Shown one piece after another: positions 268 to 48,558 of a DNA stretch of 64,000 nt. Each line of letters starts with the position of its first letter. The first letter of the stretch is position 1. The translations under genes were made by a program, and so were the position numbers. Source of the DNA: Stylophora pistillata. Its lineage: Eukaryota. The stretch spans positions 75,961 through 139,960 of the forward strand of contig NW_019217786.1 of NCBI RefSeq assembly GCF_002571385.2, in the 5' to 3' direction. The notes beneath the pieces are model-generated. The model searched no databases, was not told the origin of the DNA, and was given only the letters and a program-made list of their open reading frames with translations.

Positions 268-3200
268 AGAGTACCACTTGTGTCTTCCACGCAGAGAGGT
301 AGAAGAAGTGGACAATCTTCGCGATGAGTGGGTCAAATTGATGAATCTTGCCGAAAAAGTAAGGCGATGTAATCTAATACAGCACGATGCAGCATGAAAC
401 GGCCTCAAATATGATGGTTCTCTTTGTAAGGGTCAATTAACGCGGTGCAATTTTGTCTCATGCGACTCATTCATGTGACTTACAGTCTTTATCATTTAAC
501 ACTGAATGCGGCTACAACATGTTCATATCGCAAAGTGCTACGAAGTTTTCCCTGTATACATAACAAAATTATGTCTGTTGTTTATTGTCTCGAAGTATGC
601 TCGACAATATTTACTTCATCCGTGACTAGGACCACTTAGACAAGTCTTAAAATGTTGTTTGCACACCCTAGAATCTTGAGCCTTTCGTATGCCTTTCTTT
701 CATCCAAACCTCTCTGTAAACATTTATTTAAGATCTCTTTAATTTCTTCTCTTGATTTCGTTTTATGAAAAATGTACAGGTTAGAGACGAATTATTAGTA
801 CAAAAGCGTGGGATGTTTGAACAAGAACTGGACAAAGAAGTCAAGGTAAGAGCTGAAGTACCAAGAAGGATGCGAATCCCATGCGATGATTCAAACTTAG
901 TTTCAATTTCGCGACCTGATGGCCTTCGATTGTAGCCGCACAGAACTCGTTGGCGAGATAGGCCATATACCAGGTTCATGTGCGACAAGAGTCCTGCATT
1001 CTGGTAGGATAAGGCAAACTTGAAATATGAAATAAAATTCACTTGATGTTTTTTCTACCAGGCTTTTGTAGTGAATGTAATTCAGTTCCGGAATAGCTTT
1101 GACTCTCAAGGTCCAGGGGTGCCGGGTGTGAGACCAGCTGAAGCTGTGATAAGATTGCAAGACTTTCAACAACACTATACTCAGTTTGAAGCTAAACGAA
1201 AGACACTAGATTCTGTTCAAATGCTGTTTGGGATCGTTCCTGCACCTTTTGCAGAACTGGACAAAACAGGAGAGGTTGGTTATTACATTGATAACGCTAG
1301 GATATGGTGGTAGGCAGATCAGGTATTTACAAGTATACTTAAACTTTTGTCAATAAACAGTTGTTTCGCTTCGCTGCAGAAATTCTCTTTTTTAATGATG
1401 GCCTCTAATGAGACAAGTTATTCATTAATTTTGATAACGCAGTACATGTACATGTGAAACAGCTTTTAGTAGTTCTCTATGGTGTACACAGATTCGCGGA
1501 CATAGTGTTACCACACCTTTTCTCTTTTATAGGAACTCGAACTTCTTGGTTTACTGTACGGTCTGTTCCAGCAGTTCATTTCGTTTGATCAAAGGTTGGT
1601 AGACCTATGTTAGCTTGTTAACATTGATTTGCTAGCATTGAATAAAGTTGCACACACTTGTCTCTCTTAAAAAAGGTAAGCAATAGAAATAACGCAAAAC
1701 AAAGTTTAATTGCTAAGAATTTTATTGTCAAACTTTACCTAAAGTTGCTTCTGACAAACTGTGTTTGTTCAGGTTTAGGGATACCTTGTGGTCTGAGGTG
1801 GATCTGACTGTCGCAAATCAAGAGGTATAGTGATGATAAAAACGATTTATCTTTAATTTTTAATCTAATTTATTCGCCACGGGAATAGCAGGAGAAAGGA
1901 ACAGAACTTTCGTCCCAATTGACACCTAACCCCAATTCCCAGTAGACAGGCCAGACCACATCACAGTAATCTCGTGAGTGGATTCTTTAACGTCCCCTGC
2001 CTGACCAAATTAACTAATTAATAGATGCAGGAGACGGGACCTACGGTTTATTCGTCCTTATCCGAGAAGACTAGAATCTCTATCCATTTCTTGATATTAT
2101 AGAAAGGTAGCACATTCTCCTTAGTTATTTAAAGACCTTGAGTGATGGTCCGGCCGGGGCTCGAACCCTCGACCTCCCGCACAACAGTCCGGCGCTCTAA
2201 CCAATTGAGCTAACCGGGAGGCGGTTAACTAAATTACGACCGCAAATTCATGAAATGGAAAACTTGTGGATAATTTGGTTTGCTACTGCTCCTTTCCAGC
2301 AAATCCTTAAAAGACTGCCAACAGCTGTCGTGTATTCTTGCAAAAATGAAGCAGGCCTGGGCAGTCTTACGCCCGCCCTGTTTCATTATGGGAATATAGT
2401 AAACATGTATTCGTCCTACTCGTCCCAGAATCTACATAGCACCAATGACTTAAGTGTGCACCTAGTGATCCCTATTCAAATTGGAGACGAATGTCTTTCG
2501 AGAAAACAGAATTCCAACCTCAAATTTTACTTTAGATATCAGGGTCAGGCTAAGTTTTATCACCCCTTTGGCGTGCCAACGTTGTAGGTTATCCCGGTTT
2601 CTTTGACGTGGAGCGACCAGGGGCATTGTTTCTCCTCCTGGATTGGATGATACTCCATCCCCATTAGTTTGTCCAGTTTCCGTGATATTCCGTCGGTAGC
2701 CATTTTATACTCTCAGTTGGATGGAAAGAGGCACAATCAAAATATTTTCTTGACTAAGAAAATTATCCTGGACAAAGCTGGTTTCCAGGCCTTTAAATCT
2801 GGAGTCCAGCGCTAATCATTGGGCCATCGCATCTTTCGCATATACTGGTTATGTCTTATTTTAGTTTTGCTTCATTTGTTTGTAGATGGAGCATTACTGG
2901 CAGGAGTGCCTTCGTTTGCCTCAGAGGATACAAGAGTGGGATGCGTATAAAGAAATGAGAGACGCCATAAGACATTACCTTGATGTCTTCCCCACTTTGC
3001 ACAAGCTCAATTCAAAGGTATCTACTCGAACCGTTCGCGTCCACATTTTGTGCCTCCTGGATGGTCGAGGACTAAGAACGTTCTTCAGTATACGGATAAA
3101 TGTGTAGTCTCGGCTTCTTTTTCCTTTTTTTTTTTTTTTCAGGAGAGACTCCTTCTTTAATTTTTGATTAAATATTATACTTGGTCCACCACTGATACCA

Positions 3201-9200: not shown

Positions 9201-9395
9201 CGCAATATGCTAATTAATAACTAGTCAAGGTGGGTATTAGAGTCAGTCCTTCATAAAAACTTCACTTTCCACAGCAAGGAATGTACTTGAGAGATATTCT
9301 CGAAGACCTCGGAAGGCGCAAGCTTAGAGATGTTGTGGATTTTGAATGGAAGAGAAATATCAGGTTCTATGGAACAGACAACAGCAGAGCACCTG
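268..9395 (+). CDS. Dynein heavy chain exons 1-18 in window: end of tail and linker (DHC_N2 region)
   Basis: Exons 268-358, 780-845, 1062-1274, 1533-1594, 1773-1824, 2886-3017, 3531-3640, 4053-4149, 4384-4581, 5178-5243, 5315-5407, 5997-6104, 6209-6300, 6851-7196, 7774-7908, 8338-8397, 8881-9045, 9275-9395. All are AG/GT-flanked and phase-compatible; motifs RHW, FPRF, DFEW. Confidence 0.9.
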
Positions 9396-12300
9396 GTAAG
9401 TAAATCTTTAGCCTATTATGCTGTTTAGAGAACTTTCAAATTCGCATAAAACGCTTCTGAAGCTCAAATTGATTTGTACAGACTGGAGAAAGTAAATAAA
9501 GTATTAAATTTATTACATAAAAAGAAGAAGAGCAAGAAACTGCCCACTCTCTGTAGTAGTTTTTCTTGTCTATTAAAAGGAATGTATACTAACCATGCAC
9601 TTGAATAAGACAAATTTCTGAAGAAAATAATGAAAAACAAATACTGTAGTAGCAGTAGCATTGATCGAATTGTTTGGGTGCATAACTGAACTTTAAGGAA
9701 ACCAGGAGATATAATCTCGGCATGAAGGGAAAAGACATAAGACTAAATAATAAACGGATCAAAAATAACGAACTTGGAAAAATTTGGCCGCACTTTTCAA
9801 GATGCTGTAAGATTGTTAATTATAAAATTGAACTACAACATATTCAGTCATTGACTATGTGTGACTCTTTAGGAAGGTCACCTTTACTTGGATCATTACC
9901 TTCACTGGAAGGAGCTGTTAGTCGTGCTCCCAGTTCGGAACCTCCCAAGATTACCGCTAGTGATAAGGAACACGAGGATCTCTATATACATATGTTGGAC
10001 GCTCAGCTACCTTATGGCTTTGAGTTCTACGGCTGTGAAGATTCTCTCGCCCTGACTCCCATAACAGAGAGATGCTTTCTGAGTTTGACACAGGTGATAC
10101 GATTTGTTGGTCGGTGGAACAGTGGTATTGTCAGTGAAATATTAGTGTTTTAGTTAGGGAGCAGAATGGAGATATCTTACGATGTTGTAATCTGGGGCTT
10201 TCCTTAGGGTCGAAAGGGAGTTGTTGATAGGGGCTTTTTGTGAGCCATGTGTACCTACCGAGTTATGAAAATAAATAAGAGAGGAATGGATATACGGGAA
10301 AGTAGCTTTATTTAAGCGTTTTCTTTTTTTTCTGATTATTTTAAGGCTGTTTGGAATGTCTTTGGGGGCTCTCTTGTTGGACCAACAGGGACAGGAAAAA
10401 CTGAGACAATAAAGGTAATTTTTGCTTGCAGTTCTTACTTTTCCTTCTTAATATTGCTCCTTCCCCTGCTTTTCTTCATTCCTTGCTCCATAAATGTACA
10501 ACTATATAGTCTAAATGCCCTTTTATTACTAGTATCAGGCGATCCTGAGGAACATCTGAAGAACCATTTGGAATGTCGTGGGAAAAATGGGGAAATTCGG
10601 CATTCTTTTTTTTTAGTATTTATCATTCAAACCTATTTTTGTTTCCATAGGGTCTAGCATCTTTGCTTGGTCGTTACCTGGTGTCACAGAGTTGTTCTCC
10701 AAAGATGTCTTCAGCAGCGATAGGAAAGATCATTTTAGGTCTGGCTGAGGTGAGAAATCTGTGAACTCTTGATTTCCTTTTTCTCTTTTTTGTTTCATTG
10801 TCTTGAAGAACTGAATCTTGCTGTCTTTGTAGGAAGGTTGCTGGGGTCTGATGGACGAGTTCCACAAAATAAACATGGAATGTCTTTCAGTTATGCTGTT
10901 TGAGATCCAAGCTGTACTACTCGCCTTGAGAGGTGGACTTTCCACTTGCACTTTGGAGGATGGAAAGGATGTATGTGATTTCAATATGAACTGCAATCCT
11001 AAAGATATTAGGGATACCTTTAAAGCCGGATACGCTGTGGCCTGACGAGCAACGGGCTGGATTCTAAATGGGGAAGTCTTGATTCAATCCCGGGCCTCGG
11101 TCATTCAGTTACAGGGCCTTCCCTCTCCCCTCCCCTCTCCTCCCCTCCCCAGTGTATTAATAAGTAACAACGAACTACCAGGAAAAGGTGATAAGTTGAT
11201 GTTAAGTAACCAGCATTCCTCAGTTCATATTTCTGGTCGCTCTGTGCCACAAAAACCGGGAAAAGTTTCGGCAGTAATGTTCATTAAGTGCTCAAGGGTC
11301 TTTCGCTCAGATGACTTCGAATGTGACAATAACAAACAAGTAGTACAGGGTCTCTAGTTGAAAATACATTGTAGTTCAAAGTTGAGGAGCTACTAAGGAA
11401 ATTTCTGAAGTGTTAACTTTTTTCAAGAGCTATCTATTGACAATTTTTTTATTTTTTTCTCTTCAATGATAGGTCACAGTTCAACCCAACTTCTCCATTT
11501 TCCTGACCATTTGTTCCAATGGACAAAACTTTGAATTCCCTCCTGAAGTCCGTGCTTTGTTTCGTTCTGTTGCCATGGTGATGCCAGACACGTCTCTGAT
11601 ACTCCGGGCTCACTGCGCAGGGCAGGGTTTTAAGTCACCCAAGATTTTATCTGATCGTCTGAAGCTTGTCGGGGATGTCTGTAAGGAGCAACTGTAAGTC
11701 ATCACATGTAAAATCCCTTCAATAAATGAGCTACCCCAGTTTAAGAGTGTTTCGAAGGAGATAGTCGATACAGCCATAGAGAATATTCCCAAATCTTAGG
11801 CAGTGTTTGTTTCAAGCTAAAGCAGACAATGTTATCGGGGAAGGAAACTGGAATTGGAAACTGAACTAACCAATCAGAGGATGCGTATTATGTTCATTTA
11901 TGTTTTAACGTAACATAAGCTACGAGAAATGAGAGCGTGATAATCAAAATAATTTCTAAAGAGGTATTTCAAATGTCTCTGCTCATCTTTCTTCGACAGG
12001 AGTGGAAAGAGTCACCACAACTTCAGTCTGTCTTCTTTTGTGGGCGTCATACAACATGCTGGAAAAAGGAAAAGCTCTCAAGGACCACTGGGAAGCAAAC
12101 TTAATGCTGCACAAGCTGATTTGGCGAGACCCTCCAGTACGCAGTCAATAGCCACACAATTTGGTAAGTAAAGCTGTTAGGTCGAGAACATTGATACGAG
12201 GACGTAGCTCACGGGAAAAGGGCCTATTGCAAACCTCACGAACGATTTGACACGAAACGCTGTTGCGCGTAGAGCGGATCATGTTGAAAAGTTCTTCACT

Positions 12301-15300
12301 CTCGCTCACAAAGTTTCGTAGCTGAATTGAAAACTTAGGGAGTATTGGTAAATTTTTTGGGTCAGTTAGGGTGTTCGTATGTCTTGTTTTTTGCGTTGTT
12401 TGTTTGGTTGTTTGTTTTTCAGTGTCGCGTCTTTTAATTAGATAATTGTATGCATCATTTTTCTCAGGAGCTGGAAAGGACAGAGGAAGCCAGTTTGGTC
12501 AGAAAGACAAGAAGCCTACTACCCCATCTGCTTTATCTTCTGCTGCCAGACTGGAGCATTCGTTCATTTTACAATCATTACAAGAGTGTATTGGCCCAAG
12601 ATTATCACCTGAGGTAACCACTGTCTTCTCATAAAGTGATAGCAGTTGAGGAAAACTTATTTTCTTGTTCTCTGTATTGTCTCTTGAAGTCGTTGTGAAG
12701 AGGGTATTAGAGGCAATTGGATATGATCGTATGACTTTCTCGCAGTAATTAGGACATTTCGGTAATCGTATTGGTTGCTAATTTAGCATTATCTTTCGAG
12801 TTTCGAAAGTAATCCGAGAATGCTCTAGATTTGCTTAACTTCGTTCAGTAATTGGTTGATACCACCGATATCAACGGAGTGATCTTATAGTATGGGGCAA
12901 TTGGTATTGCCAAAATAAGAATATTTCCTTGTATCATTTTCCTTCTTATTGTTTTACTTATTTTTCAACAAACCATTCAATTGAACCTTCTCTCTACCTT
13001 TAGGAACTGAACGTATTCAACATGGTTCTACGTGATGTTTTCTATGGTCTTCCCAAACCTCCTGCCCCAGCATTCCATATAACCAAAATTGTTCAAGATT
13101 TTGAAACTGTTCTCCTGGCGCACACACGCGAGAAAGGTTTTGTCGCTCATCAGCCCTGGATCGCAAAGATTCATCAGCTGTGGACTCTCTCCAAAGTTCA
13201 CCGAGGTGATTGATTCCTTAGAATTGTAGTTAGGTGGTCATTTTACTTACCTCACCAACAACATGTACCCATACATGCGAGAGCATTTACCTGTGTAAAC
13301 CGGAGCATCGGGGATTCGGCGATGGCAACAGCGCTCGGTTCACATCATTGAAGCAAGAATTCAGTTCCTCTACTTAGATTAAAAAATTAGTGGAGGTTAC
13401 TTGTGGGTCTCGTTTCTGCATCTTTGAAGGTTGTTTCGGGCTCCCGGGATTAACTCCTTCTACTATGAAGTAACATTAAAAATTTACTTGATCCGATGAA
13501 GTGCTCAGCTTTTCATCGATTTGACATTGGTAAAGACCAAGATTTATCATTACGAGCGACGCTTTGAAGTCAGACTAGGAAAGAACATATTTAAGCTTTT
13601 GCCTTCTATTATTCTTATACCTAAAGAAACATTTATGGTATTGCTTCTTAGGAATCATCGTCGCTGGGCCTCCAGGTACTGGCAAATCCTCCTGTATTTC
13701 AGGACTCGTGGAGACCCTCAGTGAATGTTCACTGGTAAAGCACAAGAACACAGGTTCACAGATGCACACGCATAAGTTACAGAGAATAAATCCATTGGCC
13801 GTATCCGATCCAGCTCTGATGTTTGGTAAAGTGAACACATCTTCTGATTTTGAGGATGGCATCTTCACTGCTTACTTCAGGAAGGCCAACAAAGACCATA
13901 GTGTACATAAGATGACCACTTGGCTGTGCTTAGACGCTCCTTTGCATCAAGGATGGGCTGAGTTTCTGAGCAGCGCATTGGATAAAGGAGAGGTGATGAC
14001 ATGTCTAGAAAACTTTTCTCACGCCTTAGAATACGACTTTGATGGGATCTAAAGCAGGGAGAGGGATGAGTAGATTTTGTCAGGACTGACAGACCATTAA
14101 TGAGACTCATTTTCCGTATAAAGTGTCTTCTTTAACCCTTTCACTCCCGAGATCTCATTAGTAACTCCCCCTCGCACACAAGCTGACCGCTGCAACCTGA
14201 CATTTATCGCAAATTCAAAGCTAATACAAGTAGCATACACTACGACCGGAAAATAACGAAAAAAGTTCCAGGCTAGTACATTATACTGGTATTGTATAAA
14301 CATTTAAAATCTTTGCGTGGGTGGGCGGGAAAGTCGGCAATGGCGGACGCATCAAAAACAACTGCCCGCCCCACAGGTCACATGACCTATACCCAGGCGC
14401 CAGCGGCGTGTGAGAAAAACATTTTTCACTTATTTTGTTCCGCTCAGCCAGTGAAAAGTCACCCTTACTGTCTGCCATTCAATTCTTATGATGTTAGTTT
14501 GCAGAGCTGGGTATTGGATCAGTTCATAATACCTTACTTGATATTTTTCTTTATTCTCGTCACTTGACTACTTGATATTGTATTGATGCATTGTGAGGAG
14601 AAGTTCTGTCTCGGTCACTCGTGCGAATTGTGAGGAGAAGTTCTGTCTCGGTCACTCGTGCGAATCAAAGGATGAACGATATCCCAACGATACACGCATA
14701 ATCTAATACCTCAAATAACAGTCATGAAGATCTTGGTGGATATAAAGTTATGTAGAAGGCACCAAACGGTACACTTCCATTCATTTAAGGATACATGGTC
14801 GGATTTGACCGTGCATATTTTTCACTCAGAAGAGAAGAAAAATTTTGCCTCTCCTCCCCGCAATTCCACGCACGTTTCTCTTAAGAGGCAATAGAAGGAA
14901 AATGAATTTCTGGAAACTTTGCCATACATTTTTTTTTCAGTAATGTAAGGTGATTTAAGATAGTTTCAAAAACTTTTGTTTTTCCATATGTTTGTCATTT
15001 CACTGTTGCTGTGGACAATATGTTTACCGCATAAAGGATTTTATGCATCTCACTATGCGTGAGGTCATTTGTGAAATCGTATAAGACGAGCTAATTGTTG
15101 TTGAAAGATATCGCATTATGTTGAGTTGCTATTAGCACGTCGAAAGATGGTATCTTCTGTCGAAAGTTATGCACTTTCAAAGTGGTAATGCTTGTGATTT
15201 TGTCTCCGTGTCTTTTTTTTTTTGTTTCAGTATCTGAACCTTTTGAACGGTGAAAGGCTGTATCTGTCAGAATATGTCAAACTGATTTTTGAGACAGATG

Positions 15301-15798
15301 ATCTAACAGACGCTTCACCTTCTACTGTCTCCAGATGTGTAAGTATATTTTTGTCTCAATTTTGCCTCTAGCTGTTGTGAGGAGTCAGTTTTAAATTCTT
15401 TAAACTACAGCTTCATTCTGTTAAAAAGAAGTTCTAAGTCGCCGCTTCCGTATCATTATTTGTGTGCTGTTAGCGTATATGATATATGTATAAGGGAAAT
15501 GAACGTGGTAGCTATAAAATGGTAGTGTAATGCCGGCTGGAATCGTAGTGTGAGATCACAATTGAGGTTGACTCACCAGGAAAAAGGATGTATGCTTGAT
15601 CATACGAGTATTAATGTTGATGCGATCACCATAAAAAAAGGATTGAAGCTGCGGTACCCATCATTTCCAATCACGATCTTCCTTAGAACACGTCTGATTA
15701 AGTCGTGTTGTTTAACTTTCAACGCCCTTCACTCAAATGAGCTTCCTTGAAGCAGCTCTTCACACAGTCATCACTGAACCGTGTCCTTGCTTACTCTG

Positions 15799-15856
<58 letters not shown>

Positions 15857-18800
15857 TTTATTTTCACTTTTCTTTGTGACCTCAGGGTATGGTGTACATG
15901 GATGAGACTGTACTGGGCTGGAGACCTTTGGCCGAAGCTTGGCTAGCAAACAGATCTCCCCAAGAAAGCCACGTATGTGTTCATGATCAACAAATGAAAA
16001 CAGAGCGTTTGTAAGATCGAGCGAACCTTGGAATTAGTGTAATTTGGGAATAATGGCGAAGAACTTTAAGCAATCCTAAAGCTAACACGTTGTGCCTTCC
16101 TCTCTCTTAGTGTTTACAAAGAGCATTCAACAAGACCGTTGATGTCATCTCGCAGTTTGTTCACTATGAAGCAAGGTAAGCTTTCGTTTAACCTTTTAAG
16201 TGGGTCAGCATCTATAACCCAGAGATAAGAGGAGAGAGGGGGAAGGGGTAGGGGTGGACTGGCTACTTACCAGGGAGGAGAAAGAATGATAATACCCGAC
16301 ACATGAATCTGTAATAGGACCGAACTGGAAACGAGGGACTCCAAACTTGAGGGGCCGGTATCTTGCCAAAATGTTTGTTTTTAACGATATCTCCCCAAGT
16401 CGCTCTGCTTCTTGGCACGTGATCAGAGTTCAACTGAGTTTGTTACGTTAATAACTGTACTCTTATTTTTGTTTCCTTTTTTAGACCATTCATGAAAGTT
16501 TGTGAGGTGGGGCTGTTTAACACGTGTCTCGCATTGTTAAAGGCTTTGATCGAGGTAAGTGTGACAGTTATGTACACTACTGTTTGTGTTCGTTTTTTCC
16601 ATTCAGCCAGAGTCATATAACGAAGATTTGAGTGTAACTTAATCGACTCGCCCTGCAGATTTATTGTAGTGAATGTCAAGAATGTCAAAAGTAATGCAAG
16701 TTTCTGTGTTTTTCGTTATGATCAGATGTTTCGATCTCACTTCATTTCAGGGAAACACTGACATTGGTGGCGAGCTTCATATTGACAGGTTGTACCTGTT
16801 CTCACTCATATGGTCATTTGGTGGACTTTTGGATGAAACAGACAGGAAGAAGTTCAGCGAACTGTTGCTGTCCCTGACAACGGCCTTGCCAGATTATGAT
16901 CAACAAATCTCCGTGTTTGATTATTATGTTGATGAATCTGGAGAGTGGGACCCGTGGCAGTCAAGGTGAGTTTCGTCGCGGTGATTTAGAGCAATTTTCA
17001 GTTGGATGTCGATATCAATACTTCATTGCATTGATTTTGCTTCATTATACTTTGTGATGGGTGTACAAAAACTCGTGCTACCCTCTCGAACAATTATTTT
17101 TGTAAATTTTAACCCAATTGTGAGCTACATACCCATTTTTTCGTCGCCAGAGGGCAAAGCAAATGTATTTACTCTTGCTTTTCTTTCGATAAAGAGTTCC
17201 AGAAGTAAGCTATTTCGATGCAGCAGATCTCCTTGGGGAGGTATTTGTGGACACAATTGACACAGTAAGTCTTCGTATCATAAAAATTAAGACATTCTTA
17301 ACTTAATTCATTTGATTGTAAGTTAACTTGCTTCTTAATTAACGTCATTATTCCTCTTCGATGAACAGACATCTTAGAATCCCTAATGCAATCCCAAAGT
17401 TGGAATGCATGAGCCAAATCAACAAAAGAAATGGACGACTTCCGCACAGAGGCTGTCATTCTTTAAGACCTGGTGTTTTTTTCTCCTTTAGATCCGTACA
17501 CGTCAGTTGATGGATTTGGCCTGCGCTTCTGGCAGAAACATTTTGCTGACCGGTCCTGCAGGATGTGGGAAAACATCCCTGATTGGCGACTTCCTCGACA
17601 AGCAAGGTGAGCGTCAAAAACAATCTATCATTACCAAATTTGGTAGTTCCCGCTTTGTTTGGCAGTGGATAACAAATGGATAAAAGAGTTACATTTTGAT
17701 TCGATTTTGTTTTCCAACGGTTTTTTCTATCCATTGCACTTTTCAGAGGATAAGAACCAAATTGTGAAACGCTACGTCTATTCAGGAACTTCGGGAGCTG
17801 CTTCATTACAACAGTTCATTGAACATAACATTTACCATAGGCAAGGTGAGTTGACCTCAGTTAGTGTTAGTATTCGAGTACGAAGTCCTTACGGCAACTT
17901 CAGGAGCCATGAAAATTAGCATTAATACATTCTCCTTATCTCCTTCGTCATTTAATGGGTGTCCTACCCATTTTTTTATCATAATTTGTTCCTTCTCCTC
18001 GTTTCTTTCCCATTTCTCCTTTCTCTGTTCACCGTACTCCTTCCCTTTAGAGACCCACGCAGGTTAGGCCGTTATCGTAGGGCGCCGTTTTAGGTTTTCC
18101 GGCCATTTTTCTCCCTACTCTGTATCATTTATTATTACACGACTCGGGCAGTCAGAGGGCCAATAACTAAAATCAACCAATCAAAATGCTCTATTGCCGG
18201 TCAATATTCTCTCAGTATTGGACCGGGCACTGTCCCGAATGGTCCCGAATGATACCGCACGTGTGTCCCTTTGAACTTCAGTCGTATAATAAATTTCTTA
18301 TTAACCAAGCTTGCTCGGGACCGTACTGAAAGAATATCGGCCCTCGGTCTTTTTTGAACGGACCTCGGGCCGATATTCTCCCAGTACGGCCCTCGCGCTT
18401 GGTTAATAAGATATATGTATTTTTTTCTTTCACGATTATTTCCTCTCTCATGTGCTGTTTCTCTCCCCTCTAAGATAGCTGCGCGACTGTGTTTTGGTTT
18501 TCAGAAGCGCAATGCCATCTGTTTCGTAAAAATTGTGCAACGGAGGTAAACAACTTTTTACAAAGAGCAGGAAAAGGCAATACAAAATCAATGTTCCATA
18601 AGTCCATAATTTGGGGACTTAGCTTTCCATTTTTTTATTTTCGACTTAGGGTTCGTGTATGGCGCTAAGAAAGGAAAAGTACTCAGCATGTTTATAGATG
18701 ATCTTAGCCTTCCTCAGCGGGATCAATATGGAACACAGGAAGTCAACGAAGTGAGTTAAACCTTCTATCTCTCTCTCTCCTCTTGCTCCGATCTTTGCGA

Positions 18801-27800: not shown

Positions 27801-30800
27801 GTTCGATAATTACTGGCTGTTCTGGTACCATAGTTGTGAATTTGGCTATTCCTTACAAAAAGATCGAGAAGCAATGGGGGCAATAAGTTATTTTTGAAAT
27901 AAAACATAAATTTGGCGATTTCAAACGTATTTTGTTTAGAATTTGCCCATTGTGATTGCATATTCCAGGAAAAAGGAGGTGAAAATGGGCAAAGAAATTC
28001 ACTGCAGGGTTTTGGGTCGCTTTTTGATTGACTGTCGTTAATCCCTGGAGGAGAGATTCACACAGTATATCTCTCCATTTAGGAGTGTTAATGGCTACCG
28101 GGAATTTTCTGAGAGAGCTATAATCTCAGTCACCACCGGGATAAGCGAGGAGCCCTATAACTTGCTGGGTTTGCAATGCATGATCTAACCTCAACTATGT
28201 TGTATGCAGGTTAAGCACTGGATGCATAAGGTTGACAGATCTTTGTGCGAGCGCCTTAGAGCTTTCCAGAGCCCCCCACCTATGGCCGGCATGGTTATGG
28301 TGATGGTAATGGTTTTACTGGGTAGACCAGAGTTTGCTCCGGGCATTGGAGGAGCGGGATCCAGCGTCCCACCTCCGACAAGGCACGATCGGAGAGGAGA
28401 TCATAGTTCATCTCTTGGGACTGGCTCAGATGAAGCGTCTCGCGCGAGCTCCGCGACACACAAGAAACGGAGCATCAAGGAACAACCTCAGAAAGTAGGG
28501 CCACAGGCTGCACTGTTGGGTAGGAAATCATTTCATTCCTAAATGTGCGTCTTACTTGCTAAGCTTTTTATCTTAATGGTATCTTTTTCAAACTTGTTGC
28601 CATTAAATTACCCAGGAGAAACACTCAAAATATTGTGGACGTCTCAGAGATGTTGTGCTGTCTCTCTTTCTTCCCTTTCTTTTTTTCTTCCTTTCATCGA
28701 TATTTCTCTTTCTCGATCATAGGAGTCAACGCCGAAGGTAAAATTGACCGCTCAACATGGAAAGCTATCCAGCAAATAATGAATGACTCGCAGAAGTTTG
28801 TCGAATCTCTACATCACATTTCCAGGAAAGAGGGACTACACGACGACATCCTCAAGGGTGTTCAGTCTTTTTTGGCTGCATCCAGCGGCGGAGATGTCAC
28901 TGACAGTGACCTGCGCACTGCTGCTCCAGGTGCAAGTGCGAGCTCTTACCAGCCTTCCCCCGGTCGAGCCTCGTTTACCCCAGGTAAATGTTAGAAAGAG
29001 TTAGTGAGTCTATAGCCAACAAACGGGCTCTCCTATAAGGTTGGCCTAAACTTGATGGATAAACGGTTAAGATAATGGCCGGCAAAGGTGAAGCAGAGTG
29101 CAGAACACATACCATTTCCTTTGACCACATGTCAACAAATCTTTCTATCCAAGACTGTTTTTAGACCGAGGATTTCGCTGAAAGAGAGTTAAAGAAAGTC
29201 CTCCATTCCTGGACTCGGCAGCTTTATGATCAGCGCGCTGAACTAATTAATGAAAAAGTGCGGATATGGTTCCTTGCCGGGTCACTTTGTTCTTTGTTCT
29301 TTATAATAATAATAATAATGATCGTTTATTCAACCTTTTTGCAGCATACACTGAATTACAAGGCGGGTCGTTAATTACAAATACTTCTACGTTACACCTA
29401 AATATAACTATTATAGACATCAATTAAATGTAAATATTGAATACTATGTAAATAATAGATATTATGAGTATTAAGACGAATCGTAAATCGGTATTTTAAA
29501 CGTGGTTCTGGTATTTGATGGTGCAAACATTTCCGAATCTCTTAGATCTTGGGGAGGCAGGTACAGACACAGTTTCTCCTGTCCCAAGGGCTATGGTCTT
29601 GTGAATGCACAACGCGGCACTAACTTTCGTAGTAGGTCGGAAGAAGAGTGACTTCGCTTGAGGAATGTTATGCTCGCATCCTCCCTCCTCTGGCGCAGAA
29701 AAATTAAGCCTAATTTCTTAAGCGCGTTCTCATAACTCAAAGACGGAAAGATAATTTTTAGTGCCCTCTTTTGTACCGATTCAATGTGATCACTTAAGCA
29801 CTGTGTGAGGCCAGCCCATGCGAGGCTCGCATACTCTAAAACAGATCTGATGATGCTAGAATAGACAAGAATAAGCTGCCTATCAGTTAATCCGCACTTC
29901 TTAAGAGCACATATTACATATAACCGCTTGTTCCCTTTCCTTGCAATAATTTATGAAAGACATGTTCGTTCCATGTTCTTTGTTCTTTTGCTAATTTCTT
30001 CACTCTTCGAGTGCCTCGCTCCACCAAGAAGTTTAAGTGAATGCTCGGAAACTTTGATGGAAACATGAATTGCAGCGAGTGGGGGTAACTAGCGATACAT
30101 AAGCATCCCGGCCTATCACAGATGAATGAGTAGTTGATGATAACTCATCAATGGTCCCAAACTTTGTTGCTTTTGTTTTTGTTTTTGTTTCTGTTTTTTT
30201 TTGTTTTTGTTTTTTTTTTTTTCAAACAGAAAAAAAGCCTCAAGGAATCACCATCACAGCAGCCAAATATTCATCAGAGGATGCTGCGGTTCTCGTAGAG
30301 TATACTGTTGCTTTAGTGGAGTACACCAGCATGTATAATCCTTACAAGAAGGCTTGCGATACCTTGGAAGAGTTGGTGAGGGAACGCGAAGAGGACGAGA
30401 GACAAGCCGAGATCGATAAAAAAGCAGAAGACGCAGAAAAGGAAAAGGTTAGAAAAAGTTTTGAAAATCATTTCACCAAACAGTAACATCAGAGGAAACC
30501 CGTCAGAATTGTAAAATTCTTGTAAAATTAATGTTCTGTGGTCAGTCTGATGCAGCGCTTCTGACCTTTCGTAATTCGTAGGCGGAATCTCGTTGGATTG
30601 GGTTCAAATCACCTTGGTAAATTCAATATATTGGCGGTCTGACAGGATAATTGTTATAGGCTTGATTGGCAGTAGAGGTCGACTACTTGACATAAGGACG
30701 TAAGTCTATCTTTTGCTTCTGGGAGAAGAATCATTTAGCAGCACTGCTCCACGGAATACCTTTCTTTTTCTTCGCAAATTTTCATCGCAACATGGCCATA

Positions 30801-31875
30801 GATTGTTCATTTTGTTATTTAAAGGAAACTGCGCCTGAGCCAGAAGTTGAGCTGACCGAAGCTGATTTGCCAGGTCTCCAAGAAACTGTGACAAAGTTGC
30901 AGAAAGAGTATGATGAAGCAGTGGTGGTGAAACATGACCTGGGCAATGATGTCAGGTCATGTAGTGAGAGGCTGAAGGCCGCTACCGACTTACTGCATAG
31001 GTAAAGATGTCCCTTGAACTGTTTGTCCGTCTGTCTGTCTATCCATCTGTATGTCTTTCTCGGCTTGTCTGTGCGCATTTCTGTCTTTTTAACTGTCTCT
31101 CTATGTCTTTACCTATCTGTCTGTCTGTCTGTCGGTCTGTCTTTGTTTGTCTCTCTGCGTATCTGTCTGTGTCTGTCCCTCTGTCATTTTATATCGGTCT
31201 GCTTATCTGTCTGTACATCTGTCTGTCTGCTTGTCTCTCTGTCCGTTTGTCTGTCCGCTGATCTGTCTGTCAATCATCCAGTCTGCTAATCTGTCTGTAC
31301 ATCTGTCTGTCTGCTTGTCTCTCTGTCCGTTTGTCTATCCGCTGATCTGTCTGTGAATCATCCGGTCTGCTTGTCTGTCTGTTTATCTGTGTCTGTCTCT
31401 CTTTGTATGATAATGTCATAGAGGGATATATCGGCAATGGAGTTATTTTTGTCGTTCGTGGGTGGTCGACTCGGGTATGCAGTTGTTTCGTTCTGCAATC
31501 ACCATCCGATAGCATTGTCACCTGATTATGATCTATTTCCACTCATTGTGATGAATTGTTACAAGGAAATCAGAGTGGATCCTGGCTGAAATGAGTTCAG
31601 ACCGTAGGACTGAATCTTAACCACAAGTGCATCATCAGTCAGTATTCTAGTTCAACAACAGCTTGCTAATACTGTATGAAATTACCAAATCAGAACTATT
31701 ATTCCTCGTACCCAACTGGAGCTCTGAGAATCTAAATGATACATTGATTCATTCCTGGTAGAGGTTGTTGAGTATTCACAAGAAGTACGAGATATAACAG
31801 AATTCGATCAAGTTGTATTTGCAGCTGAAAACGAAAAGAATAACTTTTCATCCTTTTCTTGTTTCATTGCTAGTG

Positions 31876-31911
<36 letters not shown>

Positions 31912-32305: not shown

Positions 32306-32349
<44 letters not shown>

Positions 32350-47300: not shown

Positions 47301-48558
47301 CCTTTACCACATGAGAATTCCCAGCAAATGGAGTCAGCTGGGAGGAGATTCCTCCCCTCCCCCCACGTGGAGTTTGGCCGCCTGGTTTACCGACCTTGGA
47401 AACCGGTTTTCACATATTGACCGAATCATTGTGCAGGTAAATAATCAATGCGAAAGGCGGTTTGATGTTCTGATATTTCTTGAACTGAATCGGCTGAAAT
47501 ACTTGCTCTTCGTTTGTTAGGGTCGTGAAAGAGTACCGGCCTATTGGCTTGGAGCTTTCTTTAACCCACGGCGTTTTCTCTCCATCATCAAACAGGTAAC
47601 ACTACAACAGAAAACGTTTCATTTGTAAAAATTTGTGTCTGCGTTATGATCGTATTTATTAACACCGTATGGTGTTCCTCAGGAGGCTGTCAGAAACTAC
47701 GAAGGAAGGCTTTCAGGAACAGAACCGTTTGTGTATCAAACAGAAGTCACGGGAAGAGATAAAGATCACGTGAGCAAGCGTTCTTTTTTTTTTTATTGAG
47801 GAGAGAAATTGTACAGTCGATGACCTGGAATCTTATTTTGAAATGTATTTGTTCTACTAGATCTTAGGCCTTTTCGAACCATGCTTACTTGACGGTTTCT
47901 TATGCAATGCAACAAAGGCGTTTTTTGAAATTACAACTTAATTTATTTTGTAGATGGTCAAGCAGCTGTAACTAACACTTCTGGTTTTAGTCTTGGTTTT
48001 AGTCTTGGTTCCTTTTTCTGTTTCTGGTGAGCTGATCTTATCAGTAAGAAGGAAAGGTTTCTTTTTTACACCCAGCGACTGGTCACCAGCTCCCTGAGAC
48101 TCAACTATTGTGCAACTCTGATTGTTGCCCTGCGCTCACGATTAGTTCAAACATATTCGTTTTTTTAATCACTTTCCTTTAACCGTTTCATTAGCTCACT
48201 AATTTCTGTTTAATTTAATTTCACCAACTAGTTGAGAGAACCTCCGCTTGACGGAATGTTCGTGTATGGCATTTACTTATGGGGCTGTGCCTGGGAGAAA
48301 ACCACCGGGGACCTCTTGGACGCTCCTCCAAAATCTGGCCCGACCCCTCTCCCTGTGGTACACATTGTTGCTCTTCCTCAGACTGAGAAAGCCTCCTTGA
48401 ATGACCCTGTGCGTGCCGCTGTGTCATACTCGTGCCCATGCTACTCGTCCAGGATTTGTCAGCGAGAGCCTGTTATGCTTTTGGATGTGGACAACAAAGA
48501 TGTTCCTTCCACGCGCTGGCCTCTTCGAGGACTTTCTAGTACATTAAGACCCTTTTAA
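268..48558 (+). CDS. Divergent axonemal-type dynein heavy chain (DNAH5/DNAH8-like), 5'-truncated by the window edge; 78 exons, about 3,840 aa in window
   Basis: Hand-spliced GT-AG exons join in phase with no stop until TAA at 48556-48558. Dynein hallmarks appear in the expected order: GPGVPGVRPAEAVIRLQDFQ, EIRNRHW, WLTVQDLWQHLEEVF, KRKVFPRFCF, DFEW, GPTGTGKTET, GPPGTGKS, ASPSTVSRCGMVY, GPAGCGKT, FIDDL, HYLFNLRE, LCDPQ, YRPIARR..YQTSLAQFL, GHWVLLHNAH, FRLW, GWNKP, PEACGLHP, WLGAFFNP, GMFVYGIYLWGCAW, YSCPCY. Confidence 0.95.
1935..2226 (-). mobile_element. tRNA-derived SINE
   Basis: The reverse complement starts aaccgcctcccggTTAGCTCAATTGGttagagcgccggactgttgtgcgggaggtcgagGGTTCGAGCCCcggccggacc, i.e. 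Pol III A and B boxes in a tRNA-like head, followed by a non-tRNA body. Confidence 0.8.
2575..2832 (-). mobile_element. Degenerate SINE, second family; related copies at ~11030-11300 (+), ~25490-25690 (-), ~27970-28180 (+), ~29230-30115 (+, interrupted), ~37830-38030 (+)
   Basis: Copies share a decayed core resembling gtgcctctctccacccaggagt...taccggc...gcatccc; some retain a tRNA-like head. Boundaries are approximate. Confidence 0.55.
4826..5040 (+). mobile_element. ~210 bp TTAA-flanked MITE-like repeat, degenerate copy
   Basis: Shares the core catctaatttctcc..gaataaaggaaatgatcac..agaagctcttgattgtta..aaattc with the copies at 22666, 24053, 36700 and 44999. Confidence 0.7.
5565..5720 (+). repeat. 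Dispersed repeat starting agcaattttcagttgagtgtcg; related copies at ~12790-12860, ~16989-17150 (+), ~41810-42058 (-)
   Basis: The same terminal motif and internal gtaatccg / aaaactcgtgc / ccaatca motifs recur at several intronic positions. Confidence 0.6.
7400..7545 (-). mobile_element. Decayed LINE reverse-transcriptase fragment
   Basis: The minus strand reads RVTSGVPQGSTLSPSL, followed out of frame by a DDTT remnant. These match the RT motifs GVPQGS and YADD. Confidence 0.65.
9873..13205 (+). CDS. Dynein heavy chain AAA1 module (exons 19-26)
   Basis: Exons 9873-10093, 10346-10414 (P-loop GPTGTGKTET), 10651-10749, 10833-10970 (Walker B WGLMDEFHKI), 11473-11693, 12000-12163, 12468-12613, 13004-13205. 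Confidence 0.9.
13652..17264 (+). CDS. Dynein heavy chain AAA2 module (exons 27-33)
   Basis: Exons 13652-13992 (GPPGTGKS, INP, DGIF), 15231-15338 (NGERL, FETDDL, ASPSTVSRC), 15886-15972, 16111-16175, 16485-16554, 16751-16965 (FSLIWSFGG), 17195-17264. Confidence 0.9.
14132..14675 (-). mobile_element. TTAA MITE-family-related copy split by a ~290 bp insert and carrying a 37-bp tandem duplication
   Basis: Starts ttaaccctttcactccc and resumes near 14463. ttgtgaggagaagttctgtctcggtcactcgtgcgaa occurs twice (14591-14627 and 14628-14664). Confidence 0.6.
15804..15856. repeat. (ATT)n microsatellite just upstream of the exon 29 acceptor
   Basis: Direct reading. Another (ATT)n lies at ~31878-31911. 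Confidence 0.95.
17492..21101 (+). CDS. Dynein heavy chain AAA3 module (exons 34-41)
   Basis: Exons 17492-17606 (GPAGCGKT), 17747-17845, 18650-18750 (FIDDLSLPQRDQYGTQ), 19208-19354 (AAMN), 19568-19642, 19867-20037 (PTPGRCHYLFNLRE), 20740-20892 (LWQHELTRVVKDR), 20991-21101. Confidence 0.9.
18132..18411. mobile_element. Non-autonomous element: inverted-repeat-bounded segment (18132-18292) plus terminal long hairpin (18296-18411)
   Basis: ttattacacgact...agtcgtataataa (1 mismatch), then tcttattaaccaagc..cgtactg..agaatatcggccc / gggccgatattct..cagtacg..gcttggttaataaga. Confidence 0.7.
21526..25449 (+). CDS. Dynein heavy chain AAA4 module (exons 42-47)
   Basis: Exons 21526-21692, 22337-22523 (GNALLIGSIGTHLNSL), 23082-23189 (SGEYPPLFSVDE), 23358-23497 (NLHIILC), 24325-24456 (DWP), 25138-25449. 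Confidence 0.88.
22666..22870 (+). mobile_element. ~210 bp TTAA-flanked MITE-like repeat copy
   Basis: Aligns by eye with 44999-45205; ends cagggtgtaaagggtcaa. Confidence 0.75.
24053..24263 (-). mobile_element. ~210 bp TTAA-flanked MITE-like repeat copy
   Basis: ttaaccctttac...gtgaaagggttca termini; reverse complement of the 44999 copy. Confidence 0.75.
26301..32085 (+). CDS. Dynein heavy chain stalk and microtubule-binding domain (exons 48-54)
   Basis: Exons 26301-26547, 27273-27422 (NAGNAG acceptor; 27270 also possible), 28210-28519 (RAFQSPPPM), 28723-28983 (WKAIQQIMNDSQKFVESL), 30230-30447, 30825-31000, 31957-32085 (AAFLTYCG). Confidence 0.85.
26900..27095. repeat. Degenerate GTCAGTCTGTTCGTTT-type low-complexity tandem repeat
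   Basis: Direct reading. It explains the spurious ORFs 26876-27130 and 26913-27155. Confidence 0.8.
27483..27940 (-). mobile_element. 5'-truncated non-LTR retrotransposon (CR1/L2-group-like) 3' end with (GAT)n tail
   Basis: ORF 27659-27961 encodes IHNYGTR...RTNVKQFTILNQGPKIWNSLP...FKTKL, a typical LINE ORF2 C-terminus, followed by a 3'UTR and gatgatgatgatg. Confidence 0.85.
29303..29973 (-). mobile_element. 5'-truncated LINE (CR1/L2-group-like) with (TTA)n tail and 15-bp TSD
   Basis: The minus strand encodes KRLYVICALKKCGL..VYSSIIRSVLEYASLAW..IESVQKRALKII. TSD tgttctttgttcttt at 29288-29302 and 29974-29988. Confidence 0.88.
31015..31405. repeat. (CTGT)n-derived low-complexity repeat with an internal ~80 bp duplication
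   Basis: Direct reading. It is the source of the spurious CLSV-type ORFs. Confidence 0.9.
32364..32541 (+). repeat. 25-bp minisatellite x7 (actgaacagtgtggagaatatgcat) inside a TTAA MITE copy (~32209-32565)
   Basis: Seven near-identical units starting at 32364, 32389, 32414, 32439, 32464, 32489 and 32514. Confidence 0.95.
32699..48558 (+). CDS. Dynein heavy chain AAA5, AAA6 and C-terminal domain (exons 55-78)
   Basis: Exons 32699-32807, 33405-33584, 34095-34250, 34761-34798, 35218-35389, 35814-35959, 36402-36587, 37435-37546, 38133-38309, 38656-38792, 39611-39709, 40617-40752, 40917-41003, 41441-41626, 42311-42508, 42606-42719, 44564-44675, 44792-44922, 45817-46110, 46484-46600, 47227-47436, 47521-47595, 47683-47769, 48232-48558 (stop). 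Confidence 0.88.
32883..33331. mobile_element. MITE, ~450 bp, with terminal inverted repeats
   Basis: agagagttttagatcc...ggatctaaaactctct is a 16-bp perfect IR that extends imperfectly, in a TA-rich flank. Confidence 0.8.
36700..36890 (-). mobile_element. ~200 bp TTAA-flanked MITE-like repeat copy
   Basis: Contains tcaggggtgatattgaaaggagaaattagatgctggtcactc, shared with the other copies. Confidence 0.7.
39215..39392. mobile_element. Penelope-type terminal repeat fragment (related to 1-60 and 52490-52590)
   Basis: Shares the gtggcca.tttaca.t.tcaactca..tgata motif and the tttcgagcg.tagcccttcgtc motif with the Penelope-like fragment. Confidence 0.55.
40091..40331. mobile_element. MITE-like element with short TIR
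   Basis: ggccggttattt...aaataaccggcc, a 12-bp inverted repeat. Confidence 0.55.
42853..42960. repeat. Near-perfect ~108 bp foldback hairpin
   Basis: atcctcgtagttatgaaccctacttatgtagtggaaataaggcctg / caggccttatttccactactacatatgtagggttcattactgcgaggat. Confidence 0.85.
44999..45207 (+). mobile_element. ~210 bp TTAA-flanked MITE-like repeat, best-preserved copy
   Basis: taacccttcg...gaataaaggaaatgatcaccaactaagaagctc...gagaacagtatggagaatatgcatactgatgttagggtgtgaagg. Confidence 0.8.

What the first reader, a model, noticed from the sequence alone, without database searches (positions are those of the whole stretch)
268..48558. Intact but motor-degenerate dynein heavy chain: candidate 'pseudo-dynein' paralogue of the outer-arm DNAH5/8 lineage
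Seen: 78 exons with canonical splice sites form one uninterrupted frame of about 3,840 codons, so this is not a decaying pseudogene. Known: AAA1 is the main ATPase of dyneins and its motifs are almost invariant. Seen here: AAA1 sensor-I and sensor-II are lost, the AAA4 P-loop is destroyed, AAA6 motifs are altered, and the stalk and MTBD carry long inserts. Tail and AAA5-lid segments (GPGVPGVRPAEAVIRLQDFQ; YRPIARR...YQTSLAQFL; WLGAFFNP) resemble DNAH5/DNAH8. Inference: a duplicated outer-arm chain repurposed as a non-motile scaffold, brake, tether or regulatory subunit. It parallels the divergent vertebrate DNHD1 but appears to have a different origin.
Basis: partly seen in the sequence, partly recalled or inferred. 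Interest (0 to 1): 0.88.

Follow-up and report, generated by a model that had tools for sequence, protein, structure and literature searches.

The report
Coral orthologue of non-motile DNAHX dynein

Summary
RNA contigs and reads confirm all nine introns tested.

The gene starts about 22.5 kb upstream of the window. In full it has 94 exons and 5,242 codons, with no stop.

It is under strong purifying selection: dN/dS is 0.08 against a related coral's transcript.

It is an orthologue of DNAHX, the non-motile dynein heavy chain found in sea-urchin sperm (Chai et al. 2025 preprint). It is 44.7% identical end to end to that protein, against 28% to DNAH5/8. In the tree it sits inside a 100%-supported DNAHX clade that follows the species tree.

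It shares the family's derived features:
- AAA1 sensor-I Asn and sensor-II Arg are lost.
- The AAA4 Walker A and B motifs are dead.
- A pre-sensor-II insert sits in the AAA4 small domain.
- Inserts interrupt both stalk helices and the MTBD, before H3 and at H5.

Kollmar's 2016 class-12 dyneins are very probably the same family. DNHD1 is class-11.

The genome also carries three canonical outer-arm alpha loci.

Verdict: real, correctly interpreted, already known. The function is inferred from the sea-urchin orthologue.

The parts
268..48558 (+). Exons 17-94 (78 exons, 3,839 codons) of a 94-exon, 5,242-codon DNAHX-type dynein heavy chain gene. Exons 1-16 lie upstream of the window (G000:C3:53,423-71,814).
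   Evidence: Spliced model. RNA junctions. Collinear with full-length orthologues.
10379..10402 (+). AAA1 Walker A (GPTGTGKT, residues 2225-2232). Intact, and it keeps the Thr that bilaterian DNAHX replace by Val.
   Evidence: Alignments.
10848..10868 (+). AAA1 Walker B. Asp2277-Glu2278 are kept; the following Asn-Arg are replaced by His-Lys.
11500..11532 (+). AAA1 sensor-I loop, degenerate: Asn is Cys2329, Pro is Ser2330, Tyr is Gly2332.
   Evidence: This exon scores only 36 bits against any solved dynein.
12013..12036 (+). AAA1 sensor-II position: Arg is Ser2400.
   Evidence: (local re-alignment).
12061..12541 (+). Ser-rich insert of about 50-60 residues in the AAA1 small domain (about residues 2410-2468; spans an intron). 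Present in every DNAHX and absent from the outer-arm alpha/gamma chains compared.
13666..13689 (+). AAA2 Walker A, intact (GPPGTGKS).
17552..17575 (+). AAA3 Walker A, intact (GPAGCGKT). AAA3 Walker B (Asp-Asp) is at 18691-18714.
22356..22382 (+). AAA4 Walker A, destroyed (Lys is Leu3271). The AAA4 Walker B Asp is Ala, at 22512-23093 across an intron. Both losses occur in all DNAHX examined.
25202..25348 (+). Insert of about 45 residues in the AAA4 small domain, between helices H6 and H7. This is the pre-sensor-II insert (PS2i) that defines DNAHX (residues 3469-3517).
   Evidence: Alignment: present in all DNAHX, absent from P0038, the outer-arm alpha/gamma chains compared and the DNAH6-class protein. 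Position confirmed in the AF2 model of the 94%-identical orthologue.
26500..27347 (+). Acidic insert in stalk coiled-coil 1 (about residues 3618-3658; spans an intron).
28255..30255 (+). Microtubule-binding domain with two low-complexity inserts: before H3 (28333-28754, about 65 residues) and at H5 (28875-30255 across an intron, about 40 residues).
   Evidence: No Pfam match for this exon.
30382..30881 (+). Acidic insert in stalk coiled-coil 2 (about residues 3925-3965; spans an intron).
48232..48558 (+). Last exon: end of the C-terminal domain (the cap that PS2i contacts in sea-urchin DNAHX) plus the TAA stop. The last sliding window, which holds this exon, has the lowest dN/dS of the gene (0.026).
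   Evidence: Pfam Dynein_C.. 100% identical to coral B over 108 residues.

Best explanation
The locus encodes the coral orthologue of DNAHX, which is very probably Kollmar's class-12 dynein heavy chain. This is an ancient animal paralogue related to the outer-arm alpha chain (DNAH5/8).

Shown here:
- The gene is intact, correctly spliced, transcribed and under strong purifying selection.
- It belongs to the DNAHX clade.
- It carries the family's derived features.

Inferred mechanism, from sequence plus the sea-urchin cryo-EM work:
- AAA1 can still bind nucleotide, because Walker A and B are intact. It lacks the sensor-I Asn and loop and the sensor-II Arg needed for hydrolysis and phosphate release, so it sits in an ATP-bound, pre-powerstroke state.
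- AAA4 cannot bind nucleotide.
- The insert in the AAA4 small domain pins the C-terminal cap.
- The interrupted stalk and the insert-ridden MTBD no longer give regulated microtubule binding.

The protein would therefore be a non-motile dynein 'template'. It would pair through its outer-arm-type tail and motor with another heavy chain (dynein-X, phi particle) to hold axonemal dyneins inactive, or to deliver them, during assembly of flagella or cilia.
For: Orthology:
- The model aligns in one end-to-end blastp HSP with L. variegatus DNAHX (P0205): 44.7% identity, 4,610 bits. Against DNAH5, DNAH8 and algal gamma it gives 27.5-28.7% and 1,700-2,000 bits; against a DNAH6-class chain, 23%.
- P0205 is the preprint's protein: V2221, S2322 and T2324 fall at the published numbers.
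- In the PMSF mixture-model ML tree, 28 DNAHX rows form one clade (SH-aLRT 100) that mirrors the species tree. The window gene is sister to another scleractinian, within Anthozoa.
- The family search shows about 90 clusters of proteins, most of 5,100-5,500 aa, from Placozoa to amphibians. Scores then drop sharply to canonical chains.

Derived features.

Integrity and expression. Selection: dN 0.027, dS 0.34, omega 0.08 over 4,377 codons with no indels; the sliding window holding AAA1 gives 0.065.

Genome context:
- Among 18 AAA1-bearing loci, this one has the weakest AAA1 match (42.9 bits).
- Three other loci are canonical outer-arm alpha, 73-83% identical to the DNAH5 AAA1 module.

Mechanism and complex come from PMC11785096. 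The class-12 description comes from PMC5100056.
Against: - Function rests on one non-peer-reviewed preprint about an orthologue only 45% identical. Nothing was measured for the coral protein.
- The coral keeps a canonical AAA1 Walker A (including the Thr that sea urchin lacks) and the Walker B Asp-Glu. AAA2 and AAA3 also look intact. Sequence alone therefore cannot exclude slow hydrolysis or nucleotide-dependent switching.
- The AF2 model of the AAA4 module gives the insert low confidence. It shows a short helix but no beta-hairpin.
- The tree does not place DNAHX inside metazoan DNAH5/8.
- The equation with Kollmar's class-12 is by description only. No class-12 sequence was available to compare.
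- The transcripts come from coral holobiont RNA-seq of unknown tissue or stage, so a sperm-specific role is untested.
Confidence: 0.93

Rival explanations
1. DNAHX in cnidarians is not inert. With AAA1 Walker A/B and AAA2/AAA3 intact, it still binds and slowly turns over nucleotide. It would then act as a nucleotide-gated regulator or brake on the axoneme, rather than as a static assembly or transport template.
For: Walker A keeps its Thr and Walker B its Asp-Glu in Cnidaria and Placozoa. Bilaterian DNAHX carry Val in Walker A. AAA3 Walker A/B are intact. Every domain is under strong constraint, including the nucleotide sites. Kollmar proposed that class-12 sits at outer-arm positions.
Against: The sensor-I Asn and sensor-II Arg are both replaced. 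The AAA4 site is dead and the MTBD is disrupted, as in the sea-urchin protein, which was seen only ATP-bound and pre-powerstroke.
Confidence: 0.15
2. It is a member of DNHD1 (Kollmar class-11), or of a further divergent class not yet described.
For: Like DNHD1, it is a long heavy chain with scattered inserts and a degenerate AAA1.
Against: - It groups with XP_041462850 at full support.
- No mammal, reptile, bird or teleost is among the roughly 90 family clusters, whereas DNHD1 is a human gene.
- The preprint reports that DNHD1 lacks the Walker B catalytic residues and has inserts at other sites. The coral protein keeps Asp-Glu.
- Kollmar lists class-11 (human HD1) apart from class-12 and class-13, which humans lack.
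- No DNHD1 sequence was available here for a direct comparison.
Confidence: 0.03
3. It is an ordinary motile outer-arm alpha chain (DNAH5/8) that looks odd because of mis-annotation or assembly error.
For: Databases name its relatives 'DNAH8-like' or 'DNAH5-like'. The nearest solved chains for one exon are DNAH5 and gamma chains. There is an N gap and a duplicated block just upstream of the window.
Against: - RNA confirms the exons that carry the aberrant motifs.
- The same substitutions and inserts recur in orthologues from many phyla.
- Three separate canonical outer-arm alpha loci exist in this genome.
- The gap hides no coding sequence, because the orthologues align without a break across it.
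Confidence: 0.01
4. It is a decaying pseudogene.
For: Catalytic motifs are lost in AAA1 and AAA4.
Against: The frame of 5,242 codons is open and all 93 introns are GT-AG. The gene is spliced and polyadenylated in RNA-seq. Omega is 0.08 with no indel over 4,377 codons.
Confidence: 0.01

Closest known systems
DNAHX (Lytechinus variegatus XP_041462850; Chai, Suchenski Loustaunau, Zheng, Yang & Zhang, bioRxiv 2025, PMC11785096)
   Same: - Same clade.
- Same length class (5,242 vs 5,272 aa) and collinear end to end at 44.7% identity.
- Inserts at the same sites: tail, linker, AAA1 small domain, PS2i in the AAA4 small domain, both stalk helices, MTBD before H3 and at H5, and AAA6.
- Sensor-I Pro/Tyr and sensor-II Arg lost.
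- AAA4 Walker A/B lost.
   Different: - The coral (with other cnidarians and Trichoplax) keeps the Walker A Thr, where sea urchin has Val.
- It has Cys where sea urchin keeps the sensor-I Asn, and Ser rather than Lys at sensor II.
- Its PS2i is about 10-13 residues shorter.
- No structural or biochemical data exist for it.
Class-12 dynein heavy chains (DHC12) of Kollmar 2016, Mol Biol Evol 33:3249 (PMC5100056)
   Same: The description fits. The class is found in Holozoa/Metazoa and is absent from humans. Its tail resembles class-3 (DNAH5/8). Its stalk is 'extremely unusual', without a typical microtubule-binding site. TBLASTN similarity to the well-known dynein classes is very low.
   Different: Equivalence is inferred from the text only. 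No class-12 sequence could be compared, and the DNAHX preprint does not make the link in the text I read.
Outer-arm dynein alpha heavy chains DNAH5/DNAH8 (Chlamydomonas gamma, ODA2)
   Same: - The closest canonical class of those I could compare: outer-arm alpha/gamma, 27.5-28.7% identity, against 23% for a DNAH6-class chain.
- DNAH5 and gamma chains are among the top solved-structure hits for the AAA2 exon. The last exon ranks outer-arm chains of several classes first.
- Same overall architecture: tail, linker, six AAA modules, stalk, strut and C-terminal domain.
   Different: - Canonical chains keep the invariant AAA1 motifs and a live AAA4 site.
- They have an uninterrupted stalk and a compact MTBD.
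- They are about 4,500-4,650 aa long.
- The coral genome has three such loci elsewhere: C15, C39 and C121.
DNHD1 (Kollmar class-11)
   Same: It is also a divergent, insert-rich heavy chain, probably non-motile, with a role in flagellar assembly. It is a functional analogue.
   Different: - A different class.
- Inserts lie at other sites.
- The Walker B catalytic residues are lost.
- It is present in mammals, which lack DNAHX.

Membership tests
DNAHX | Falls in the clade that contains the founding member XP_041462850, apart from canonical classes | tested here: met
   ML tree with LG+C20 PMSF, 50 rows x 1,645 columns: DNAHX clade of 28 rows, SH-aLRT 100, with the window gene nested among corals. 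Pairwise scores. Outgroup sampling was thin: outer-arm alpha/gamma, one DNAH6-class chain and a few unnamed chains.
DNAHX | Unusually long chain (about 5,200-5,400 aa) owing to many inserts along the whole protein, including the tail | tested here: met
   5,242 aa. Twenty inserts of 12 aa or more were listed relative to outer-arm alpha/gamma. One of them was my own exon-24 error, later corrected. The other 19 recur at the same sites in the DNAHX rows that cover them.
DNAHX | Inserts in stalk CC1 and CC2, and disordered inserts in the MTBD before H3 and at H5 | tested here: met
   Local re-alignment of the stalk and MTBD. Helix names were assigned by alignment to canonical chains, not from a structure.
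DNAHX | Pre-sensor-II insert (beta-hairpin plus helix) between H6 and H7 of the AAA4 small domain, contacting the C-terminal cap | tested here: inconclusive
   An insert of about 45 residues sits at exactly this site in all DNAHX and in no other chain compared. The AF2 model of the 94%-identical orthologue's AAA4 module places it between the two helices. However, pLDDT there is 32-61, and only a short helix appears, with no hairpin. Contact with the cap was not tested.
DNAHX | Non-conserved AAA1 motifs (Walker A Thr to Val, sensor-I Pro/Tyr replaced, sensor-II Arg replaced) | tested here: met
   Sensor I and sensor II are replaced. The Walker A Thr is retained in Cnidaria and Placozoa. The preprint itself says these motifs vary within the family.
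DNAHX | Locked pre-powerstroke state with ATP at AAA1; no motility | not testable with these tools
   Needs cryo-EM or biochemistry.
DNAHX | Forms a heterodimeric dynein-X complex or phi particle with a second heavy chain | not tested
   The partner is unknown even in sea urchin. No complex prediction was run.
DNAHX | Found in aquatic animals from early-branching phyla to amphibians; absent from amniotes | tested here: met
   Family hits come from Placozoa, Cnidaria, molluscs, annelids, nemerteans, echinoderms, hemichordates, amphioxus, tunicates, non-teleost fishes, coelacanth and amphibians. There is no amniote or teleost among about 90 clusters.
Kollmar class-12 (DHC12) | Class-3 (DNAH5/8)-like tail; stalk without a typical MTBD or coiled coil; absent from humans | tested here: inconclusive
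   The features fit. No class-12 reference sequence was available, and no supplement was held.
Canonical outer-arm alpha chain (DNAH5/8) | Invariant AAA1 Walker A/B, sensor I and sensor II; live AAA4 P-loop; compact MTBD | tested here: not met
   Canonical copies lie elsewhere in the genome.
DNHD1 (class-11) | Orthology with human DNHD1; Walker B catalytic residues lost | tested here: not met
   Walker B Asp-Glu are present. The family has no mammalian member. The literature keeps the classes apart. There was no direct sequence comparison.

The most novel reading that the evidence does not exclude
Three small points go beyond the text I read.

1. Order of events. The dead AAA4 nucleotide site, PS2i, the stalk and MTBD inserts and the loss of the sensor-II Arg are shared by Placozoa, Cnidaria and Bilateria. 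The Walker A Thr-to-Val change is found only in the bilaterian DNAHX examined. The degeneration was therefore essentially complete in the common ancestor and did not start with Walker A.

2. Possible partner. This genome has exactly three heavy-chain loci whose AAA1 region lacks most of the canonical motifs: this one, C422 and C168. That matches Kollmar's three divergent metazoan classes. One of the other two may be the class-13 chain with an outer-arm-beta-like tail, which Kollmar proposed as the class-12 partner. It would then be the unidentified second chain of dynein-X.

3. Expression. Multi-kilobase transcript contigs appear in coral colony RNA-seq from several studies. This hints that DNAHX may not be restricted to sperm.
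Probability: 0.3. Interest if true: 0.5.

Novelty: already known. Interest (0 to 1): 0.25.

Why it matters
DNAHX is an interesting family: a dynein that evolved into a non-motor. It may explain how single-headed axonemal dyneins are kept inactive and delivered. The family, its degenerate AAA1, its inserts and its outer-arm affinity are already published. Cnidarian members are already in the databases, under misleading 'DNAH8-like' names.

This report adds four things:
- a verified 94-exon coral gene model with RNA and selection support;
- a correction of the gene's extent;
- a probable link between DNAHX and Kollmar's class-12;
- a few comparative details: family-wide loss of the AAA4 site, and retention of Walker A in early-branching animals.

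It also shows that the first-stage reader can recover a real and subtle biological class from raw sequence.

Tried and rejected
- Joined model not searched. Searches used single exons by reference, or orthologous proteins returned by the tools. The joined model was used only in local scripts (alignment, tree, dN/dS).
- No solved DNAHX chain found. Three exons gave at best weak hits (35-43 bits) to canonical dyneins: outer-arm alpha/gamma for the AAA2 exon, outer-arm chains of several classes for the last exon, and cytoplasmic dynein-1 for the sensor-I exon.
- Rfam found nothing in the window.
- The first junction solver mis-set several introns where weak exons were missed. It was replaced by gap-filling chains. 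One acceptor still had to be fixed by hand.
- The global MAFFT alignment misplaced sensor II. I re-aligned that region locally.
- The AF2 model of the AAA4 module did not resolve the fold of the insert.
- Kollmar's supplements are not held, so class-12 could not be checked by sequence.
- I tried to label the divergent C168 locus by a PDB search. It gave no clear class; the best hit was DNAH2 at 80 bits.
- No DNHD1, outer-arm beta, inner-arm I1 or cytoplasmic sequences were available for the tree, so the position of DNAHX among all classes was not re-derived.
Full report
**What is in the window**

The window is G000:C3:75,961-139,960 of a 398-Mb assembly in 5,513 contigs. Its plus strand is full of short open stretches with dynein heavy chain signatures. 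Pfam assigns single exons to DHC_N2, AAA_6, Dynein_AAA_lid, AAA_8 and Dynein_C. Several exons fall below or near the cut-offs.

An HMMER search of 1.84 billion representatives with the AAA2 P-loop exon found only 177 proteins. The long ones were 4,400-5,250 aa. Their database names were uninformative: 'dynein gamma chain-like', 'DNAH8', 'uncharacterized'.

**Gene model**

tblastn with these proteins showed a locus collinear with them from an ATG about 22.5 kb upstream of the window to a stop at 48,556-48,558.

I built a spliced model in local scripts from two coral orthologues: P0224 (a Logan transcript assembly) and P0220 (Montipora foliosa). The two gave identical introns at all 83 shared junctions. 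One acceptor had to be corrected: exon 24 starts at 4053. This removed 22 spurious residues that no orthologue has.

The final model has 94 exons, 93 GT-AG introns and 5,242 codons, with no stop and no N. Of these, 78 exons and 3,839.3 codons lie between 268 and 48,558.

The N gap and a duplicated block just upstream of the window (C3:69,259-69,943 repeated at 72,196-72,880) lie in intron 16. They hide no coding sequence, because orthologues align across them without a break.

It was used only in local scripts.

**Expression and selection**

Many public runs hold about a quarter of the 31-mers of window 9,800-15,400, which is the exonic share.

I laid four runs on that stretch. PolyA RNA contigs from two studies skip all nine introns at exactly the modelled GT..AG sites. 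One of these contigs is 9.9 kb long. Stranded raw reads show six of the same joints, with the first mates all on the minus strand, which in most stranded libraries means plus-strand RNA.

Against the transcript of a related coral (L006, run ERR9592236):
- The proteins are 94.4% identical, with no indel over 4,377 codons.
- dN is 0.027, dS is 0.34 and omega is 0.08.
- Omega ranges from 0.03 to 0.17 in every 300-codon window, including the one holding AAA1 (0.065). It is lowest in the last window, which holds the C-terminal domain (0.026).

This is a functional gene.

**Identity**

A word-indexed search with the caecilian relative showed a sharply bounded family of about 90 clusters. Its proteins are mostly 5,100-5,500 aa long. 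They come from Trichoplax, cnidarians, molluscs, annelids, nemerteans, echinoderms, hemichordates, amphioxus, tunicates, non-teleost fishes, coelacanth and amphibians. Scores are 400-1,000 bits and then drop to 282 or less for canonical outer-arm chains.

[quoted passage not shown] Its founding member is a 5,272-aa Lytechinus variegatus 'DNAH8-like' protein. P0205 is that protein: V2221, S2322 and T2324 fall at the published positions.

The coral model aligns with P0205 in one end-to-end HSP (44.7% identity, 4,610 bits). Against DNAH5, DNAH8 and algal gamma it gives 27.5-28.7%; against a DNAH6-class chain, 23%.

In a mixture-model ML tree the 28 DNAHX rows form one clade (SH-aLRT 100) whose internal order follows the species tree. 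The window gene is sister to coral B, inside Scleractinia and Anthozoa.

DNAHX, together with an unnamed 4,481-aa metagenomic protein (P0038), is sister to all outer-arm alpha/gamma chains, protists included. It is not nested in metazoan DNAH5/8. With long branches and thin outgroups this does not settle when the duplication happened.

**Derived features**

All of the following were compared across phyla.

AAA1:
- Walker A (GPTGTGKT) and the Walker B Asp-Glu are intact.
- The sensor-I Asn is Cys2329, and the Pro/Tyr of that loop are Ser/Gly.
- The sensor-II Arg is Ser2400.
- A Ser-rich insert follows in the small domain.

Other AAA modules:
- The AAA2 and AAA3 P-loops and the AAA3 Walker B are intact.
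- AAA4 has lost the Walker A Lys (Leu3271) and the Walker B Asp (Ala) in every DNAHX. The preprint's text does not mention this.
- An insert of about 45 residues lies between H6 and H7 of the AAA4 small domain. It is present in all DNAHX and absent from all other chains compared. This is the PS2i insert.

Stalk and MTBD:
- Both stalk helices carry acidic inserts.
- The MTBD carries low-complexity inserts before H3 and at H5.

An AF2 model of the AAA4 module of the 94%-identical orthologue is confident for the core. The insert itself has pLDDT 32-61, with a short helix and no hairpin.

**Genome context**

PF12774 (the AAA1 domain family) hits 18 loci in this genome. The window's locus is the weakest, with one exon at 42.9 bits.

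I fetched all the others and compared them:
- Fifteen carry the canonical Walker B string, and most also carry the canonical Walker A.
- Three of these (C15, C39, C121) are 73-83% identical to the DNAH5 AAA1 module. The coral therefore has ordinary outer-arm alpha genes as well.
- Only C422, C168 and the window locus lack most of the canonical AAA1 motifs.

**Earlier literature**

Kollmar 2016 (PMC5100056) defined metazoan classes 11, 12 and 13.
- Class-11 is human DNHD1.
- Classes 12 and 13 are absent from humans.
- He proposed that classes 12 and 13 form an outer-arm-like heterodimer.

By description, class-12 is DNAHX. I could not test this by sequence.

**Mechanism**

Shown here: an intact, expressed, constrained DNAHX orthologue with the family's motif losses and inserts.

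Inferred from the sea-urchin structures:
- AAA1 is ATP-bound but non-hydrolysing.
- The C-terminal cap is pinned by PS2i.
- Regulated microtubule binding is lost.
- The protein is a permanent pre-powerstroke head that pairs with another heavy chain as a phi particle (dynein-X). It may keep axonemal dyneins inactive or carry them during flagellar assembly.

The intact Walker motifs in the coral leave room for a nucleotide-gated role. I give that rival 0.15.

**Verdict**

The feature is an already described family, so interest is low.

They agree with what I found.

Noticed in passing
window 50382-51419 (-): Intronless 345-aa ORF for a rhodopsin-family GPCR (Pfam 7tm_1, E 4e-33), about 1.8 kb downstream of the dynein gene on the opposite strand.
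   Followed up: partly
window 63524-63790 (+): An open stretch encoding ankyrin repeats (Pfam Ank_2/Ank). Probably an exon of a further gene that runs off the window.
   Followed up: partly
window 14130-14660 (intron 43): RNA depth of hundreds to thousands here. It comes from two adjacent interspersed repeats: one of about 290 bp at 88-92% identity, and one of about 165 bp at 83-85%. There were 2,928 first-look candidates in the genome. Reads run off into unrelated sequence, so this is repeat expression from elsewhere, not a nested gene. No Rfam match.
   Followed up: yes
G000:C3:69,259-69,943 and 72,196-72,880, with an N run from about 72.8 to 75.96 kb (just upstream of the window): A block of about 685 bp that includes part of exon 13 is repeated next to an assembly gap inside intron 16. 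It looks like a scaffolding artefact. No coding sequence is missing.
   Followed up: partly
G000:C422 about 103.6-105.4 kb (L007) and G000:C168 about 527-530 kb (L008): Two more dynein heavy chain loci whose AAA1 regions lack most canonical motifs; C168 has a variant Walker A. These are the only such loci besides the window's among 18. They are candidates for Kollmar's class-11 (DNHD1-like) and class-13. Class-13 is a proposed partner of class-12.
   Followed up: partly
G000:C15 about 1.078 Mb, C39 about 0.953 Mb, C121 about 0.483 Mb (L011, L017, L023): Three canonical outer-arm alpha loci, 73-83% identical to the DNAH5 AAA1 module. This fits Kollmar's two early metazoan duplications of class-3.
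   Followed up: partly
P0038 (4,481 aa, ENA metagenome contig of 19 kb): An unnamed protein that is sister to the DNAHX clade (SH-aLRT 99). It lacks PS2i and the MTBD inserts. Its AAA1 Walker B Glu is Asn and its AAA4 P-loop is degenerate. It may be a pre-metazoan (holozoan?) relative of class-12.
   Followed up: no
P0075 (Bufo gargarizans 'DNAH8') and P0042 (Argonauta hians 'DNAH5 isoform X2'): The toad DNAH8 groups with canonical chains, yet its AAA1 Walker A, Walker B neighbourhood and sensor-I loop are altered. The Argonauta protein is a very divergent, shorter (4,378 aa) member of the DNAHX clade.
   Followed up: no
G000:C3:48,390-50,290 (upstream of the gene, outside the window): Open stretches with an astacin-type zinc-protease motif (HExxHxxGFxHE) and what looks to me like a kringle-type Cys-rich stretch (not checked against Pfam). 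This is the neighbouring gene upstream of the dynein.
   Followed up: no
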